Positions 10,238 through 21,559 of a stretch of 64,000 nt of DNA are shown one piece after another. The stretch comes from Podarcis muralis (lineage: Eukaryota): assembly GCF_964188315.1 (NCBI RefSeq), contig NC_135656.1, positions 71,610,001 to 71,674,000 of the forward strand, in the 5' to 3' direction. Position 1 is the stretch's first letter; every line of letters starts with the position of its first letter. A program made the translations under genes and the position numbers. Under the pieces are notes generated by a model. The model saw nothing but the letters and a program-made list of their open reading frames with translations, was not told the DNA's origin and made no database searches.

Positions 10238-11005
10238 TCCTGTGGGCTTTTGCGGGAGATGGGGGAATTCCCCCACCTTCCGCAAAAGCAGGCAAAAGCT
10301 GCGCGCTCTTTAAAGAGGCTCCGTGGCTTCTGCTGGCTTTTCTAGGAGGTGGGGGAATTCCCCCACCTCGCAGAAAAGCCTGCAAGAGCCGCGCACCCTT
10401 TAAAGAGCGAGTGGCTCTTGGGGGCTTTTCCCCAAGGAGGGAGACGGGACTGACTGGCCGAGTCAGTCCCTTCTCCCTCCTGCGGGCTTTTGCAGGAGGT
10501 GGGGGAATTTTCCCACCTCCCGCGAAAGCAGGCAAAAGCCGTGCGCTCTTTAAAGGGGCTGCACGGCTTTGCTGGCTTTTCTAGGAGGTGGGGGAATTCC
10601 CCCACCTCGCAGAAAAGCCTGCAAGAGCCGCGCACCCTTTAAAGAGCGCGCAGCTCTTGGGGGCTTTTCCCCAAGGAGGGAGAAGGGACTGACTGGCCAA
10701 GTCAGTCCCTTCTCCCTCCTGCGGGCTTTTGCGGGAGATGGGGGAATTTCCCCACCTCCCGCAAAAGCAGGCAAAAGCTGCACGCTCTTTAAAGAGGCTC
10801 CGTGGCTTCTGCTGGCTTTTCTAGGAGGTGGGGGAATTCCCCCACCTCGCAGAAAAGCCTGCAAGAGCCGCGCACCCTTTAAAGAGCGAGCGGCTCTTGG
10901 GGGCTTTTCCCCAAAGAGGGAGAAGGGTCCCACAGGAGTCACGCGGGGCTCCTGTGGGCTTTTGCGGGAGGTGGGGGAATTCCGCCACCTCCCGCAAAAG
11001 CAGGG
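10238..11005 (+). repeat. Higher-order tandem array, ~3.2 copies of a ~240-bp unit built from palindromes
   Basis: Unit starts at 10238, 10478, 10717 and 10950; contains GGGGGAATTCCCCC-centred and TTTAAA-centred inverted repeats. Confidence 0.92.
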
Positions 11006-15017: not shown

Positions 15018-16420
15018 TCCTTAACTCGCTTGTGTTAGGTTCTCCCTAAGGAGCAAGTGCATCCCCAAATAAACAAAATAGAAAGATACAAGGATGAGCC
15101 ATGGCTGTCTACAAATGAAAGATGTATACACAGCGCAAGTCACTTATATAATGTGCCACTTTATGCAGGCCTAAAGCTTTTTCATTGAGACTAGTCCAGC
15201 CAATCAACTTGCTATGCTCATTTTGAACAATCATTCTGAGGTTCCTTCTTTGTATGCTTTCCCTACAGTACATTTACTGCTTCCTACATTGGCTTTAACT
15301 GTTTCACCACAAATAATTATTTCTGACTCTAACCCTAAAGAGCAATGGACTGAGGATGGAAAGAACTACAAGTTAGCACGGCGCATCCAAGTTTTCCCAA
15401 ACATGTGTTAGCAGTTGTTAATAATAATGCGAACGCTGGGCATTTACAAAAGAGTATCAAAAGGAAGAGGAGATGTTTACTCCTTCATCTGCTCCCTCTA
15501 TCCACCACACCTATCCACACCCAGTCGCCAAATCTCTCTCCTTTCAGTGGTCTTAGGAGGCAGGCGAGAGTAGTTGTCGGGAAGGATCAAGCCCACCACT
15601 ACTTTTTATATGCAGATATGCACCTCAACCTTGCATGAGTCTTATGAGGCAGACATGGGACTGGGAACTCTGTGTTTCCTTTAGAAAGTGTCCTTTCTCC
15701 TCATCCTTTCCCAGGCTTATTGAACAAAGCAGGAAGAATATAAGTGGAGCACACTGTAATCCAGTAGGCAGACAGACTAGCAGCAACAACTGTCCAAATT
15801 GCATTCACCATGTGTTGATGTATACACAGACATGCAAACACATAGGCAATGCCTTCTGATTCAACTGTGCACCCAGGAGCACTGGTAAAGTGAGCAGGAC
15901 CATAACGCAAAGGGGAAAAGCGGCAGATTAAGCACTTGGTGACTGGAGTATGAAGGGCTGTGCTTAGGAGGCAATGAGCTTTGAGGCAAGATGGCTCAGT
16001 TTCTTGCATGAATTGAACTGTAACTTTGCACGTGGGACTCCCTTTGTTATCGTCCTTTTGCAAGAGAGGAATAACGATACTCACCTGGACAAAATTTCTG
16101 GTGTGCCATTTGGCTTCATTTTTGAATGTTACTGAATTTGAATGCTGCTTCTCCCATGAAGCTTCACGCTTCAAGGAAATGGGGGGCACGATAGTAGTGA
16201 GTGGAGAAGGAATGCACAAGAGAAAACCCTGAGGACCTGTTTCATTTGTGGAACAAATCAATATTCCATAGTGCACAGACGTTCTCTGGACAGTAACAGA
16301 GAACCACTCTTCACCCACAGCAAAAAGAGAACAAGGTGGACAGCCATGCTTTGGATAGGAAAGTACATCCTTCATATAGATTGATAGGGGCTAACTCTAG
16401 ACTGTAGAAGGGGATGTATT

Positions 16421-16823
16421 TGTTGGGTTTGGAACTTCATAGGTTAAGTTCTTCCCATGATGCCTCAATTCTGACGTCAGTTTTCGAAGCTGGGAGGAGC
16501 TGGGAGGAGTCGAGTTCAGTTCTCTCTGTGCTCTGAGAGAGAGAGGCATGCCTTTGCAATGGCTGCCAGCAGTGATGGCTGAAACGTTCCAATAAAGAAC
16601 TGTAAATAGACAAACCTGCCTCTGTGTGTTTGTCTGGAAGCTAAGTAAGGACGTAAGGCTGTTTTACATCGCTGTGCTTCAACTCTGCTACTGGCGTGAC
16701 TGGACGAAAGAGCAGAGGCACGCAGAGGAGGCGTGCCGGACCTGCCGGATCTGCCATAAAGAGCTAATTGTGGACCAATAAATCAATTAGCGGGGGTCGC
16801 GCCAATAAATCGTGTTATGCACA
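16421..16823 (+). repeat. 5' LTR of the Copia-type element
   Basis: Identical to 19860-20262 except C16585 versus T20024; CRE TGACGTCA at 16472-16479; AATAAA at 16591. Confidence 0.97.
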
Positions 16824-17101
16824 GGTTATGGAGGTCAGCCAACGCTCGTAAAACAGTCGTAAAACAGCTTCAGGAAGGCTTTGAAGCTGGGATCTGAGAA
16901 ACGGGAGCTGGCCGGATGTCGGAGGCTGCTTACAGTGCGTCTAAGAGCCAAAGAAGCTGCTGAGAGAGCTGCTGGAACACAGAGCTGGAGCACAGAAGCA
17001 GCTGGGAGCTGAAAGGCAGCTGAGAAATCGTTTCTCCACGGAAGGGAGTGCCAGGGAAGCTTGTGAGTACAGCTTGGGGCCCCTTGGGAGAACGGGAGAA
17101 G

Positions 17102-19975
17102 ATGGCTGAGAGCCAGGATATACCGGTGGAAAAGCTCACTCTAAAGAGTTGGGCAACCTGGAGCAAAAGAGTAAAGGGGTGGTTCCTGGTCCATGGGCTT
17201 TGGGAAGCAAGCCAGAGGGAGCCACTACCACCAACCCCCAGCGCTAAAGCGGCTGGACACGTTGCAGGCTGTGATGCTGCGTTGCCGGAAGATAGCCAGC
17301 AGAAAATGCAAAGAGAGCTGGAGATGCTCAAGGCATGTGTTGATGCTTCACTGAGACCCCACCTAGAGGGTGTGAAATCAGCGTGGGCGGCCTGGAATTT
17401 ACTGAAAGGCCTGTGTCAAGCTTCACCGGGAGGCCAGAGCCCTGCAGACGCTGGTCTAGAAGCCCCTATTCCCCAATCAGCCTCAAGGAGCGCTGGTGCG
17501 CAGATCAGGGGGGGCAGGAGTTCCAAAGGCAAGTTTGAAAAACTTTCCACTTGTGCTGAAGCGGAGAGCAGCTTCAGGGGGGGCGAGGCTGGTGGGAGGC
17601 GCCGTTCCAGAAGGAGGAGGGCCAAGCCAGCTGGGAGCCCCGGGCAGTGTTTTTCCACTGGAGTTCGTCGATGCTACGTGTGCAATTCGGCGCAACATCT
17701 GAGTGGCAGTTGCCCCCACCGGAGCAGAGAGCCGGGGCAGGATGTTCATACTTCCCATGGGAACCAGGCGGGTTTCCATGGCAACAGGCCTGGGAAGGCA
17801 GGCAGGCGTGGAACAGAACCAGGTGGCCGTGGTAAACAACGGGAAGAGTCTTATCAAGTCTCTGCGAGCATGGCGTTGTTTGAAGGCAGCTGTGTGGAAA
17901 ATTCCGAGCTCAGCTTTGTTATTGACTCTGCAGCTAACCGCAACATGGTTCCAGAGACCCCTGCAGTCGAGATGTGGAATTGCAAGGCAGTTCCAAAGGG
18001 ACAAACTGTGCTTTTTGCAAATGGGCAGAAAAAGAATGTAACATGTCTTGTTGACTTACATGTGTTTGTTTTACAGGAATCGATGGAATTTTGTACCGTT
18101 CCTGGGATGCACCACTGTCTTTTATCTGTGCCTTGTCTGTTAAAAAAGGGTTTCCAGGTTTGTTTCCAGGGGGATTTCTGCATAATTTCCAGAGGAGGGA
18201 AACGCCTTGTCGAAGTGAAAAGGGGACAGAATGATCTTTTCATTCTTAAAACGTCTCTTGGGGGTGAAGGGAAGGCTGAGAAAGCACAAGCGTTGCGTGC
18301 TACAGTTCCCAACCAGCGTACTACAATTCCCGCTCATGATGCCACATGTGCATGCGTATGGCATCAGAGAACAATTCATGGGTCGGTAGAGGACTTGCAG
18401 ACTCTGCCCGAGGTTGCCAAGGGGTGTAGAATTAAAAATTGTGGAAGTGCCATTAATTGTGACACTTGCAAGCAGGCAAAGGTAAAAGGCTGCAGTTACC
18501 CAAAGGTAGAAAGGGTAGCCACAAAGCCCTTTGAATTGGTTCACATAGACTTGTGGGGTCCTGTGAGGGAAGCAAGTCTGGGAGGTGCAAGGTTTCTGCT
18601 GACGGTTCAAGACAGTTTTTCGCAGAATTCCTGGAGTTTAGGTCTCAAATCCAAGGAGGATGCAGCACAGCTGATCAGGACCTGGATTGAGGGAGTGGAA
18701 CTAAGGTTTTCCACCAGAGTGCAAGCGATCATCAGTGACAGAAATGCTAAGTACACTGGTTCTGCTTTGCAGGAGTTCTTTCACAAGAAAGGGATACGTC
18801 ACACAGTGACTTCACCCAGTCAGAAGGGGGTGGCAGAGCTTAGAAGTGAGGCTCTGGTTAAAGCTGCACAGGTGTTGCTGAAAGAGTCTGGGTTACCTCC
18901 AAGGTTTTGGCTGGAGGCAACCAGGTACGTATGCTTCACCTGGAATAGGACCTACAATTCGCTGGTAGGTGACACACCGTTTTCTTTGTTGAATGGCAGA
19001 AAGCCCCAGGTTCACTTTCTGCGCAGGTTTGGTTCATCTGCGGTTGTCCCTGTGCCCAAGGCTTTGCAAGGGCCAGATGGAGCCAAGTTCCAGAAAATGA
19101 TCTTCTGTGGGTATGAGCCAGAAGCTCGTGCATGGCGGTTTGCTTACCCATCAGGTGATCAGAGTAAAGTGCTGATCAGTAAACACGCTGAGTTCTTTGA
19201 GCAGAGTGGGAAGCCAAAGGTTGTTGTCCGGCGTGATCTTCTCTCAGATTGTCTCTCTGACCCAGAGGACAGTTGTGATGAGGAGGAAGCAGAGGCTGAT
19301 CCCAGTGATGAGGACCAGGTCCAGGATCAGGGTTCAGAATCCGATGATGACGATCAGGTCATTGACCAAAGTCAGGAGCAAAGTCAGGAGCAGGATGAGG
19401 TTTCTGTAGCTTCTCCACAAGATGTTAAGAGAGCACCCAAAAGCGAGCCTAGTTCTCCTGTGAGTGTGATGGAAAGGATTCGAAGACGCTTTAAGTCAGA
19501 GGGGGAATCCCGTGATGCAGAGGTCACACCTGCTGGTGACGGTGAGCCAGAGGAAACACCTGAGTTTGTGCCTAGGCGGTCCAGTCGCACAACAAAGGGT
19601 ATTCCGCCTGAAAGGTACCAGGCCATAGGTGCGTGGGTAAATTTCGCACAGTGCGTTTCTGAGAATTGTGAGGTGGTTCCACAAATGCCAAACAGGTCTG
19701 CCAAGGGAGGGCACGAGGCATTGGGGATGGGATTGATCTCACAAGGTGTTACTGAAGGGGTTCAACAGGTGCCTGGGAAAGATGCCGAAAAGGGGCACAA
19801 GGCAGAGGGAAAGGTGTTGAACTCAAAAAGGTCTTGTCAGAATGCTCGGCAAGGGGGGGTGTTGGGTTTGGAACTTCATAGGTTAAGTTCTTCCCATGAT
19901 GCCTCAATTCTGACGTCAGTTTTCGAAGCTGGGAGGAGCTGGGAGGAGTCGAGTTCAGTTCTCTCTGTGCTCTGA
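17102..19975 (+). CDS. Copia-type Gag-protease-integrase polyprotein (957 aa from the first ATG), no RT/RNase H
   Basis: Gag N-terminus KLTLKSWATWSKRVKGWFLVHGLW; CX2CX4HX4C knuckle 17672-17713; protease FVIDSAANRNM at 17924; WHQRTIH...CDTC; HIDLWGP / SDRN / GVAEL integrase triad; RRSSRTTKGIPPERY; no YVDD. Confidence 0.9.
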   Translation: MAESQDIPVEKLTLKSWATWSKRVKGWFLVHGLWEASQREPLPPTPSAKAAGHVAGCDAALPEDSQQKMQRELEMLKACVDASLRPHLEGVKSAWAAWNLLKGLCQASPGGQSPADAGLEAPIPQSASRSAGAQIRGGRSSKGKFEKLSTCAEAESSFRGGEAGGRRRSRRRRAKPAGSPGQCFSTGVRRCYVCNSAQHLSGSCPHRSREPGQDVHTSHGNQAGFHGNRPGKAGRRGTEPGGRGKQREESYQVSASMALFEGSCVENSELSFVIDSAANRNMVPETPAVEMWNCKAVPKGQTVLFANGQKKNVTCLVDLHVFVLQESMEFCTVPGMHHCLLSVPCLLKKGFQVCFQGDFCIISRGGKRLVEVKRGQNDLFILKTSLGGEGKAEKAQALRATVPNQRTTIPAHDATCACVWHQRTIHGSVEDLQTLPEVAKGCRIKNCGSAINCDTCKQAKVKGCSYPKVERVATKPFELVHIDLWGPVREASLGGARFLLTVQDSFSQNSWSLGLKSKEDAAQLIRTWIEGVELRFSTRVQAIISDRNAKYTGSALQEFFHKKGIRHTVTSPSQKGVAELRSEALVKAAQVLLKESGLPPRFWLEATRYVCFTWNRTYNSLVGDTPFSLLNGRKPQVHFLRRFGSSAVVPVPKALQGPDGAKFQKMIFCGYEPEARAWRFAYPSGDQSKVLISKHAEFFEQSGKPKVVVRRDLLSDCLSDPEDSCDEEEAEADPSDEDQVQDQGSESDDDDQVIDQSQEQSQEQDEVSVASPQDVKRAPKSEPSSPVSVMERIRRRFKSEGESRDAEVTPAGDGEPEETPEFVPRRSSRTTKGIPPERYQAIGAWVNFAQCVSENCEVVPQMPNRSAKGGHEALGMGLISQGVTEGVQQVPGKDAEKGHKAEGKVLNSKRSCQNARQGGVLGLELHRLSSSHDASILTSVFEAGRSWEESSSVLSVL

Positions 19976-20262
19976 GAGAGAGAGGCATGCCTTTGCAATG
20001 GCTGCCAGCAGTGATGGCTGAAATGTTCCAATAAAGAACTGTAAATAGACAAACCTGCCTCTGTGTGTTTGTCTGGAAGCTAAGTAAGGACGTAAGGCTG
20101 TTTTACATCGCTGTGCTTCAACTCTGCTACTGGCGTGACTGGACGAAAGAGCAGAGGCACGCAGAGGAGGCGTGCCGGACCTGCCGGATCTGCCATAAAG
20201 AGCTAATTGTGGACCAATAAATCAATTAGCGGGGGTCGCGCCAATAAATCGTGTTATGCACA
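19860..20262 (+). repeat. 3' LTR of the Copia-type element
   Basis: Direct repeat of the 5' LTR, preceded by the PPT and followed by the TSD. Confidence 0.97.
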
Positions 20263-21559
20263 GTATTTTCAGTACAGACTTGTATCCTCTCTCTCTTAAA
20301 AAACAACCCCACCCAGGTGATAATTTGCGCTCTTACAGACCCCACACTTCTAATGGGTTGTTGTCTATCAGGATTGCCTCCCCAGAGCGTGTGTTTGCAT
20401 GCCGGCAAGTATATAAAAGACGGAGAATTACTTATTACACAGATCCTGCTGCAAATAACAGTTCTGTGTTTGGCATTATGCCAGTATACTTCTGTCTCTG
20501 GAAGCTTTCCAAGAGCTGCAGCTGCGAAGTTCTTGTGAACATTTTTCACTTGCTGGCTTTGCATTGCCAGTAGCTAATGGCTAAGGATGGAGAGAGTGAG
20601 AGTGTGCCTGGCCTCATTCCTCACTGCCTCTCAGGAGTAAAAAGTAAAGGCGGACGTTCATTTAGAGGGCTCATGACAGCACACCATTGCACTTTCTGAG
20701 TTGCTGAGTTTGCCAATCACAGTTTATGGTAGCTCCAGAGGCCTTAAGGGTTTCTCACAGCTGACAACACTGGGAGAAAAAATCACCTACATACGGGGCT
20801 ATTGCGAAAACTGCTGAATGAATATTCAGGCATTAAGGGGCTCATGCAATGAGGGGAGAGTGGGAACATGCTAGTTGACCCCAGCTCTTCCTTTTGCCTC
20901 CCCCTTGCTGGCCCGGCCATCCTCCAATCATTGGAGGAAAAGTTCCATACCAGGAAGCCTACACAAATACAGCTGGCTTTCTGCTGTAGACCCTCTTCTC
21001 TTGTCCAACACAGAGAAGGCAATGGGAACAGTCAAGCCATCTTCACCTTAACTCATGTAATGCTAAATAGGTCTTAAAATAAACCTAACAAGAAGGCTTA
21101 CCCAGTGGGTGAGGGCCATGTTTCTAGGTCACCTCCAGACTGCCACTGTTTTGCAGGAGGGATTTAGTCACAAAAATGACACAGACACAGGCTTGGCCCA
21201 ACCACAAAGTGGCAGAAGCCCCCGAGGCAGTACATCTATGGGTGCCCCGCCGCCTCTGGCACTGGCGCTGACATGGCATCTAAATCTTGGAAGATCTCAC
21301 CAGAAATTGGTGCCACTTTTCTGGTGGTGGAGGTGGGGGTAGGACTGGGCAGCACGTCCAGTTATGTCTCAAGCAGTGAAATGGGATGCACTGCCCCTGC
21401 AGAAAAATGCATTAGAGAGTGTGGGATAATTTTTGATTGACAGAAAGATGTGTAACCTCTGCGCAAGCAAGTCAGGATGAATGCTGAATCAAGAGCAAAC
21501 ACCGTATATAACCTACATACCAGCTGTGTTCAAGGAAATCAGGATGATACTCTGGACTG

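What the first reader, a model, noticed from the sequence alone, without database searches (positions are those of the whole stretch)
16421..20262. Very recently inserted Copia-type element with no reverse transcriptase or RNase H, yet a fully open 957-aa gag-PR-IN ORF
Seen: 403-bp LTRs identical at 402 of 403 positions, a perfect GTATT TSD, a PPT, and one uninterrupted ORF. After the RRSSR..PERY linker the ORF has only ~115 aa before the stop, with no YVDD or RNase H core. Short remnants (NCEVVPQMPNRS and KVLNSKR) loosely resemble the start of Copia RT and the end of RNase H. Established: Copia order is gag-PR-IN-RT-RH, and LTRs are identical at insertion. Inference: an RT/RH deletion derivative was mobilised in trans very recently. 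If many copies share this structure, it is a coding non-autonomous lineage, comparable to plant TR-GAG or BARE-2 parasites. I do not know whether one is described in squamates.
Basis: partly seen in the sequence, partly recalled or inferred. Interest (0 to 1): 0.78.

Follow-up and report, generated by a model that had tools for sequence, protein, structure and literature searches.

The report
Lizard Copia element lacking reverse transcriptase
This is a freshly inserted lizard jumping gene from a many-copy lineage that has lost its own DNA-copying enzyme and must borrow one, yet it keeps one long reading frame open although its remaining enzymes look worn out.

Summary
At 16421-20262 lies an LTR retrotransposon with 403-bp LTRs (402/403 identical; the one mismatch is a CpG transition), a GTATT target duplication, a polypurine tract and one 957-aa ORF. 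Pfam finds integrase core and SH3 but no RVT_2 or RNase H. tblastn shows that homology to complete Copia polyproteins stops about 12 residues into the RT domain. The insertion is absent, as an exact empty site, from two other individuals. Related sequence is multi-copy in three species. A Podarcis muralis protein and an expressed variant in a sister species share the RT-less tail. So it belongs to a propagating non-autonomous Copia lineage mobilised in trans.

New here: the ORF is open but degenerate. About 80 capsid residues are missing, the protease motif is DSA instead of DSG, and four invariant integrase residues are changed. It keeps 45 of 65 conserved columns (complete Copias keep 54 or more). 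Sampled variants are 5 synonymous to 21 non-synonymous, yet every indel that could be sized keeps the frame. The autonomous partner was not found.

The scan has reported this same lineage before on other DNA of this genome (s1-188857, s1-152796, s1-193713). The closest described analogues are in plants.

The parts
16416..16420 (+). Target-site duplication GTATT, 5' copy
   Evidence: The empty-site joint 16415->20263 leaves one copy.
16421..16823 (+). 5' LTR, 403 bp, TG...CA termini
   Evidence: 402/403 identical to the 3' LTR.
16472..16479 (+). TGACGTCA palindrome (CRE-like) in the presumed U3. A tandem GCTGGGAGGA x2 follows at 16489-16508.
   Evidence: pattern positions. A promoter role is inferred only.
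16591..16596 (+). First AATAAA in the LTR (20030-20035 in the 3' LTR), the likely polyadenylation signal. It would place the ORF stop about 55 nt upstream of it.
   Evidence: Use of this signal is inferred, not shown.
16711..16742 (+). Block in the LTR that resembles the sense 5' half of initiator tRNA-Met (24/32)
   Evidence: score 36 against a shuffle mean of 18 and maximum of 27.
16824..16846 (+). Primer-binding site directly after the LTR. GGTTATGG is perfectly complementary to the end of the tRNA-iMet 5' half; the match is degenerate after that.
   Evidence: 8 nt perfect, 18 of about 23 with gaps.
17102..19975 (+). Single ORF of 957 aa plus stop: gag remnant, protease-like, integrase, linker, RT stub, then read-through of the PPT and 113 nt of the LTR
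17102..17434 (+). Gag N-terminal part, homologous to the first ~100 aa of Copia gag
   Evidence: (P0007 aa 1-101, E 1e-5) and alignment A1
17435..17659 (+). Low-complexity spacer in place of the rest of the capsid domain (about 80 alignment columns missing). There is no Retrotran_gag_2 hit.
   Evidence: 12 of the 26 listed ORF variants fall here.
17672..17713 (+). CCHC zinc knuckle, CX2CX4HX4C, intact
17921..17935 (+). Protease active-site motif reading IDSAA, where relatives have DSGA
   Evidence: Gly in 89% of 28 complete Copias; Ala here
18359..18469 (+). Integrase HHCC zinc-binding motif, kept
18521..18820 (+). Integrase catalytic core (rve). D483 and D546 are kept. E579 (18836-18838) lies just beyond this part's end; a 3-aa deletion precedes it, and N575K, R580L and R583E lie around it.
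18995..19207 (+). Integrase SH3-like domain. The invariant Lys is replaced by Pro at aa 658, also in P0006.
19208..19606 (+). Acidic linker after the integrase
   Evidence: An in-frame -39 nt variant at 19299-19345 occurs in two species.
19607..19786 (+). PERY motif and the stub of the RT N-terminus. Homology to complete Copias ends at 19741-19786, about 12 aa into RVT_2.
19787..19849 (+). Pre-PPT segment with no detectable homology. The surrounding bin (19672-19835) has the highest depth in both DNA and RNA.
19850..19859 (+). Polypurine tract
19860..20262 (+). 3' LTR
20263..20267 (+). Target-site duplication GTATT, 3' copy

Best explanation
This is a member of a self-propagating, non-autonomous Ty1/Copia lineage of lacertid (Podarcis-type) lizards. 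An old internal deletion removed the sequence from about residue 12 of the RT domain to the end of RNase H.

The element keeps the cis parts needed for retrotransposition: LTRs with TG/CA ends, a primer-binding site of the Copia half-tRNA-iMet type, and a polypurine tract. I infer that its RNA is packaged, reverse-transcribed and probably also integrated by proteins of a complete Copia present in the same genome. This copy inserted very recently into unique intronic-type sequence and is still absent from other individuals.

Its 957-aa ORF is probably no longer a working gag-protease-integrase. The capsid is truncated, the protease glycine is lost, and the DNA-contacting residues next to the catalytic Glu of integrase are lost.

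The frame is nevertheless kept open right into the 3' LTR. I take this to mean that the replicating lineage is selected for uninterrupted translation. Possible reasons are protection of the genomic RNA from long-3'UTR decay, or a non-catalytic cis role of the Gag N-terminus and zinc knuckle. It does not appear to be selected for enzyme activity.

Shown: the anatomy, the absence of RT/RH, recency, multi-copy status, shared RT-less tails, and degeneracy. Inferred: trans-mobilisation, the identity of the helper, and the reason for the open frame.
For: Anatomy and absence of RT/RH:
-.

Recency:
- The LTRs are 402/403 identical.
- Exact empty-site contigs occur in X2 and X15 at the same depth as the flanks.

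Lineage:
- Summed depth over the element against the flanks is about 3000 vs 10, 100 vs 9 and 1500 vs 17 in three species.
- P0006 (XP_077785850.1, Podarcis muralis) shares the tail and the K658P change.
- In organism C, 69 RNA reads carry a form that is 84 nt shorter in the tail and runs on through the PPT into the LTR.

Degeneracy:
- Alignment A1.
- 45 of 65 conserved PR+IN columns are kept, against a mean of 61.6 and a minimum of 54 in 28 complete Copias.
- Variants are 5 synonymous to 21 non-synonymous, against a neutral expectation of 5.9 to 20.1.

Frame kept:
- Neutral substitution alone leaves the ORF stop-free in 4.5% of simulations at 3% divergence and 0.1% at 8%.
- The three ORF indels that could be sized are +3, -39 and -84 nt.

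Complete Copias in Podarcis:
- They exist as 1385-1386-aa polyproteins (P0162, P0163, P0165), in a cluster with P. lilfordi proteins.
Against: - No autonomous partner with matching LTR ends, PBS and PPT was identified. The nearest complete Copia proteins are only 34-37% identical.
- The depth sums are not copy numbers, by the tool's own warning. They also cannot separate RT-less copies from any close RT-bearing relative upstream of the breakpoint.
- The variant sample is small: 26 of 418 places, the best supported only.
- Only three indels could be sized (P about 0.04 under neutrality).
- P0006 is a gene model, so its frame is open by construction.
- Unusual residues might already have been present in a still-functional, unsampled parent.
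Confidence: 0.82

Rival explanations
1. Semi-autonomous element. Its own Gag, protease and integrase still work, and only RT/RNase H is borrowed. The ORF is open because the proteins are needed.
For: - The ORF is fully open over 957 codons.
- The HHCC motif, the D,D,E triad and the zinc knuckle are kept.
- Indels are in frame.
- An earlier follow-up on another copy (s1-188857) concluded that selection preserves the protein.
Against: - The protease Gly of D-S-G is Ala.
- Four residues invariant in 28 complete Copias are changed, three of them beside the catalytic Glu.
- About 80 capsid residues are missing, and neither Retrotran_gag_2 nor Pol_BBD gives a Pfam hit.
- Variants in PR-IN are 2 synonymous to 8 non-synonymous.
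Confidence: 0.13
2. There is no self-propagating lineage. RT-less copies arise again and again, by a recurrent template-switch deletion during replication of a closely related complete master element.
For: - Deleted genomes arise often during retroelement replication (general knowledge).
- Several tail variants exist.
Against: - The degenerate protease, integrase and gag are incompatible with a near-identical working master.
- P0006, 76-81% identical in protein, shares both the RT-less tail and the K658P change, so the loss predates much divergence.
- No protein more than 50% identical and carrying RT was found among 1.84 billion representatives.
Confidence: 0.04
3. One-off event: a deletion after insertion, or an assembly collapse, at this locus only.
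For: None beyond the fact that only one copy lies in the window.
Against: - The TSD is clean, and exact empty sites occur elsewhere.
- The RT-less tail is seen in P0006 and in RNA of another species.
- Contigs across the tail have high depth.
- There are no N runs in the window.
Confidence: 0.01

Closest known systems
TR-GAG elements of plants (Chaparro et al. 2015, PMC4350172)
   Same: Short (<4 kb) non-autonomous LTR retrotransposons with LTRs, PBS, PPT and one retained ORF. They are recently active although they lack RT, and for TR-GAG1 no autonomous partner was found either.
   Different: TR-GAGs encode only Gag. This element has a truncated Gag plus protease-like and integrase regions, is of Copia order, and sits in an amniote.
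BARE-2 / BARE-1 of barley (as described in PMC4350172)
   Same: A Copia-superfamily parasite that is mobilised by a complete relative.
   Different: BARE-2 lacks Gag but keeps the pol enzymes, including RT. Here RT/RNase H is what is missing.
RLG_Quinta / RLG_Cereba and 'semi-autonomous' RLG_Sabrina of wheat (PMC11302176; Wicker et al., PMC9744471)
   Same: A long-lived non-autonomous lineage that lacks RT but keeps an intact ORF. The papers' criteria for a pair (identical PBS, LTR termini and PPT) are the ones that should be tested here.
   Different: These are Gypsy superfamily and plant elements. Quinta lacks integrase as well and is argued to contribute working Gag. Here the partner is unknown and Gag is truncated.
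Complete Copia elements of Podarcis (polyproteins P0162, P0163, P0165; cluster with P. lilfordi proteins)
   Same: Same superfamily and domain order, and the same host genus. They align from gag to the first residues of RT.
   Different: Only 34-36% identical. They carry the full RVT_2 and RNase H domains, the DSG protease motif, and all the invariant integrase residues.
Deleted ERV derivatives of mouse such as IAP I-delta-1 and ETn/MusD (from my own knowledge, not checked here)
   Same: Vertebrate LTR elements with internal deletions that are mobilised in trans and can outnumber their helpers.
   Different: These are retroviral (ERV class II), not Copia, and their deletion patterns differ.

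Membership tests
Ty1/Copia LTR retrotransposon | LTRs with TG...CA termini and a 5-bp target-site duplication | tested here: met
   The empty site confirms the 5-bp duplication.
Ty1/Copia LTR retrotransposon | Integrase lies upstream of RT in the polyprotein (gag-PR-IN-RT-RH) | tested here: met
   The integrase (rve, SH3) is followed by the stretch that precedes RVT_2 in complete Copias.
Ty1/Copia LTR retrotransposon | [quoted passage not shown] | tested here: not met
   No Pfam hit at E up to 1. No tblastn match in any frame of the window. The element is therefore a derivative, not a complete member.
Ty1/Copia LTR retrotransposon | Copia-type Gag (Retrotran_gag_2) | tested here: inconclusive
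   No Pfam hit, but the first ~100 aa align with Copia gag (E 1e-5) and the zinc knuckle is intact.
Ty1/Copia LTR retrotransposon | PBS complementary to initiator tRNA-Met (the half-tRNA primer of copia) | tested here: inconclusive
   8 nt are perfect directly after the LTR, then the match degenerates.
Non-autonomous LTR retrotransposon lineage (trans-mobilised) | Lacks at least one protein essential for retrotransposition | tested here: met
Non-autonomous LTR retrotransposon lineage (trans-mobilised) | Several copies share the same defect | tested here: met
   P0006, an RNA variant in another species, and multi-copy depth in three species. An exact census was not possible.
Non-autonomous LTR retrotransposon lineage (trans-mobilised) | Evidence of recent transposition of the defective form | tested here: met
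   LTRs 402/403 identical, a TSD, and empty sites in two other individuals
Non-autonomous LTR retrotransposon lineage (trans-mobilised) | An autonomous partner with matching LTR termini, PBS and PPT (criteria quoted in PMC11302176) | not testable with these tools
TR-GAG | The single ORF encodes Gag only, with no protease or integrase similarity | tested here: not met
   rve and SH3_retrovirus hits
BARE-2 type | Gag is lost while pol, including RT, is retained | tested here: not met
   RT is absent and the Gag N-terminus is present.
LARD / TRIM | No coding capacity in the internal region | tested here: not met
   A 957-aa ORF

The most novel reading that the evidence does not exclude
The open frame is maintained by selection for translation itself, not for the encoded enzymes. 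The lineage would keep one uninterrupted ORF from the leader to within about 55 nt of its polyadenylation signal so that the genomic RNA avoids decay triggered by a long 3' UTR. Alternatively, the nascent Gag N-terminus and zinc knuckle may capture their own RNA in cis and carry it into a helper's particles. Meanwhile the protease, the integrase and even the non-homologous tail drift freely in sequence. That would be a parasitic strategy not described for LTR retrotransposons of vertebrates.
Probability: 0.25. Interest if true: 0.72.

Novelty: new variant of a known kind. Interest (0 to 1): 0.5.

Why it matters
Copia elements are absent from mammals and birds (PMC4350176), and active ones in amniotes are little studied. 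This lineage is currently mobile and polymorphic, and it has no reverse transcriptase. That shows a helper-parasite system of the plant type (TR-GAG, BARE-2, Quinta) operating in a lizard.

It also gives presence/absence markers for Podarcis populations.

The combination of an intact frame with worn-out catalytic residues raises a testable question: what keeps a parasite's ORF open when its enzymes no longer matter?

Tried and rejected
I could not fetch the DNA of P0006, P0007 or the complete Podarcis Copias. This ruled out comparing LTR, PBS and PPT with candidate helpers, and ruled out nucleotide dN/dS.
- **Word searches.** The whole ORF gave only distant Copias. The C-terminal 366 aa gave only P0006. 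The N-terminal 400 aa gave nothing. Length limits and repeat masking of annotations make these blanks uninformative.
- **RNase H remnant.** A loose K.L...R resemblance to the TKPL end of P0162 cannot be tested.
- **Rejected readings.** Assembly collapse or a one-off deletion, and LTR homogenisation by gene conversion in place of recent insertion, are both rejected by the empty sites.
- **Literature.** Searches for a described RT-less Copia in lizards found none. The library lacks most subscription papers and Repbase, so this is weak evidence of novelty.
- **Depth ratios** are given only as orders of magnitude, because the tool warns that they are not copy numbers.
Full report
**Observation**

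The window holds a complete LTR retrotransposon at 16421-20262 on the + strand.
- The two LTRs (16421-16823 and 19860-20262) are 403 bp each and differ at one place, 16585 C against T, a CpG transition.
- They begin with TG and end with CA, and are flanked by a perfect GTATT duplication (16416-16420 and 20263-20267).
- A purine run, CAAGGGGGGG, abuts the 3' LTR (19850-19859).
- GGTTATGG follows the 5' LTR directly. It is complementary to the end of the 5' half of initiator tRNA-Met as I remember that tRNA. That is the primer type of Drosophila copia (own knowledge). Beyond 8 nt the match degenerates.
- One ORF runs from the ATG at 17102 to a stop at 19973-19975, 957 aa, ending 113 nt inside the 3' LTR. 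The other two frames of the same stretch hold 37 and 61 stops.

**What the ORF contains**

Pfam finds the integrase core (aa 474-573), the retroviral SH3-like domain (632-702) and a weak GAG-pre-integrase match. It finds no RVT_2, RVT_1 or RNase H at E up to 1.

A scan of 1.84 billion representative proteins found complete Copia polyproteins as the nearest RT-bearing relatives, at 34-37% identity. One cluster of these contains Podarcis lilfordi proteins and 1385-1386-aa polyproteins with gag, Pol_BBD, rve, SH3 and RVT_2.

tblastn of five complete polyproteins against the whole window aligns them from the zinc-knuckle region to 19741-19786, which is about 12 residues into the RVT_2 domain of P0010. 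It finds nothing of RT or RNase H in any frame anywhere else in the window. So about 480 residues of RT and RNase H are missing.

The proposed RNase H remnant could not be confirmed.

**Recency**

I laid contigs of three DNA runs (three species labels, coded A, B, C) and raw RNA reads of species C on 15900-20800.
- Flanks have single-copy depth (about 10, 9 and 17).
- In X2 (species A) and X15 (species C), one contig at exactly flank depth joins 16415 to 20263. It skips 3847 nt, which is the element plus one TSD copy. This is the empty site.
- The X15 flanks differ from the window at only 3 of 516 and 3 of 371 positions. Those of X2 and X7 differ at about 3.4%. The window's genome is therefore closest to species C, and the insertion is absent from that individual.
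- Together with the near-identical LTRs, this shows a very young insertion that is polymorphic or species-private. It excludes LTR homogenisation or assembly collapse as explanations.

**Lineage**

- Summed contig depth over the element is about 3000, 100 and 1500 in A, B and C. That is roughly 300, 10 and 90 times the flanks. The tool warns this is not a copy number, so I take it only as tens to hundreds of related copies, with strong differences between species.
- The only protein above 50% identity in the representative library is P0006, a 315-aa RefSeq model of Podarcis muralis (XP_077785850.1). It runs from the integrase C-terminus through the acidic linker, PERY and the same RT stub, and then straight into PPT- and LTR-like codons, without RT.
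- In species C, 69 RNA reads match from 19753 onward. Upstream they carry a sequence whose best match in the element is 19639-19664 (21 of 26). This form is a net 84 nt shorter in the tail. Further reads run from 19844 through the PPT into the LTR start. First mates lie mostly on the minus strand, which in most stranded libraries means sense transcripts.
- So at least three tail variants, all RT-less, exist in at least two species, and one is expressed.
- Notes of this scan describe three more young RT-less Copia copies with open ORFs elsewhere in this genome: s1-188857, s1-152796 and s1-193713, of 3828, 4035 and 3994 letters. I could not verify them and use them only as leads. They do mean that the scan has already found this lineage on other DNA.

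**State of the ORF**

Against complete relatives (alignment A1):
- Gag aligns for its first ~100 residues, then lacks about 80 columns of the capsid domain, which are replaced by a low-complexity spacer. The CCHC knuckle is intact.
- The protease motif reads DSA where relatives have DSG.
- The integrase keeps HHCC and the D, D, E residues. It has a 3-residue deletion before the Glu, and QNG.AER.NR has become QKGVAELRSE.

To quantify this, I aligned the PR-IN part with 28 complete Copia polyproteins and took the 65 columns conserved in at least 85% of them. The ORF keeps 45. The 28 keep 61.6 on average and never fewer than 54. Four of the lost residues (N575, R580, R583, K658) are invariant in all 28. 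K658P is shared by P0006, so it is old within the lineage.

Of the 26 best-supported ORF differences between this copy and contigs of the family, 5 are synonymous and 21 are not. The neutral expectation is 5.9 to 20.1. Within PR-IN the count is 2 to 8. I therefore see no amino-acid-level constraint, and I consider the protease and integrase probably inactive. This differs from the conclusion noted for s1-188857.

**The frame is nevertheless kept**

If the conserved positions drifted freely, 20 losses in 65 columns imply on the order of 10% neutral divergence. In simulations, substitutions alone leave the ORF stop-free in 4.5% of trials at 3% divergence and 0.1% at 8%.

The three ORF length variants that could be sized are all multiples of three:
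- +3 at 17838/17842.
- -45+6 = -39 at 19299-19345, seen in two species.
- -84 in the tail.

By contrast, 10 of the 12 best-supported small indels lie in the LTRs or leader. The sample is small (P about 0.04 for three in-frame indels) and the lists are truncated. Still, the pattern suggests selection for an uninterrupted frame rather than for sequence.

The stop lies about 55 nt before the first AATAAA of the LTR, so nearly the whole RNA would be translated.

**Mechanism**

Shown: the element lacks RT and RNase H, has the cis signals, moved recently, and belongs to a diversified multi-copy lineage.

Inferred:
- Its RNA is reverse-transcribed in particles of a complete Copia. Such elements exist in Podarcis and, by the scan's notes, as young intact copies in this genome.
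- The 5-bp duplication points to a Copia-type integrase, probably the helper's.
- The LTR also carries a block like the sense 5' half of tRNA-iMet (16711-16742; 24 of 32). The scan noted this feature in complete lizard Copias (s1-181798, s1-189834). It hints at a shared primer-handling system, but this is not a test of partnership.
- Why the frame is kept open is unknown. My preferred readings are protection of the RNA by translation, or a non-catalytic cis role of the Gag N-terminus and knuckle.

**Comparison with known systems**

The closest described systems are in plants:
- TR-GAG: Gag only.
- BARE-2: no Gag, RT kept.
- Quinta/Cereba and Sabrina: RT-less, with an intact Gag ORF.

The element fails the defining features of TR-GAG, BARE-2 and LARD/TRIM. 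It fits the general kind 'non-autonomous LTR retrotransposon with partial coding capacity'. Copia is reported as absent from mammals and birds but present in reptiles (PMC4350176). My searches found no paper describing an RT-less Copia lineage in a lizard, but the library is incomplete.

**Limits**

The partner, the true copy number and nucleotide-level selection tests remain open.

**Verdict**

The added finding is that the ORF is open but degenerate. It is a new variant of a known kind, already met by this scan at other loci. Interest is moderate.

Noticed in passing
window 16711-16742 and 20150-20181: The LTR carries a block that resembles the sense 5' half of initiator tRNA-Met (24/32; score 36 against a shuffle maximum of 27). 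Earlier scan notes report the same feature in complete Copias of this genome.
   Followed up: partly
window 16472-16479 and 16489-16508 (repeated in the 3' LTR at 19911-19918 and 19928-19947): A perfect TGACGTCA palindrome (CRE-like) followed by a tandem GCTGGGAGGA x2 in the presumed U3. It is a possible promoter element of the family.
   Followed up: no
window 16846-16867: A tandem TCGTAAAACAG x2 in the leader just after the PBS. The leader is also rich in AGCTG motifs. The function is unknown; it may be a packaging or dimerisation signal.
   Followed up: no
window 15900-16415 and 20263-20800 (read laying): The flanks are 0.6% different in species C but about 3.4% different in species A and B. 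Yet the best word-holders of the element were runs of species A. Family abundance relative to the flanks differs about 30-fold between species (roughly 300, 10 and 90 times), which suggests lineage-specific bursts.
   Followed up: partly
window 19672-19835: This bin has about three times the DNA depth of the rest of the element in species A and C, and also the RNA peak. One contig (X2, loose end behind 19834) continues into unrelated sequence. The ~80-nt pre-PPT segment may therefore also occur in another element or context.
   Followed up: partly
window 17102-17106 (X2 loose end behind 17106): Four contigs of species A share the leader and the start codon, then continue with a different gag start (one search found no good match for it inside this element). 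This hints at a subfamily, or a possible partner, with the same 5' end but a different gag.
   Followed up: partly
window 10238-11005 and 32652-32669: Other first-reader notes on this window: a palindrome array inside a DNA-transposon shell, and a CACNA2D2 micro-exon. The second implies that the Copia insertion lies within or near the CACNA2D2 gene. Neither was examined.
   Followed up: no
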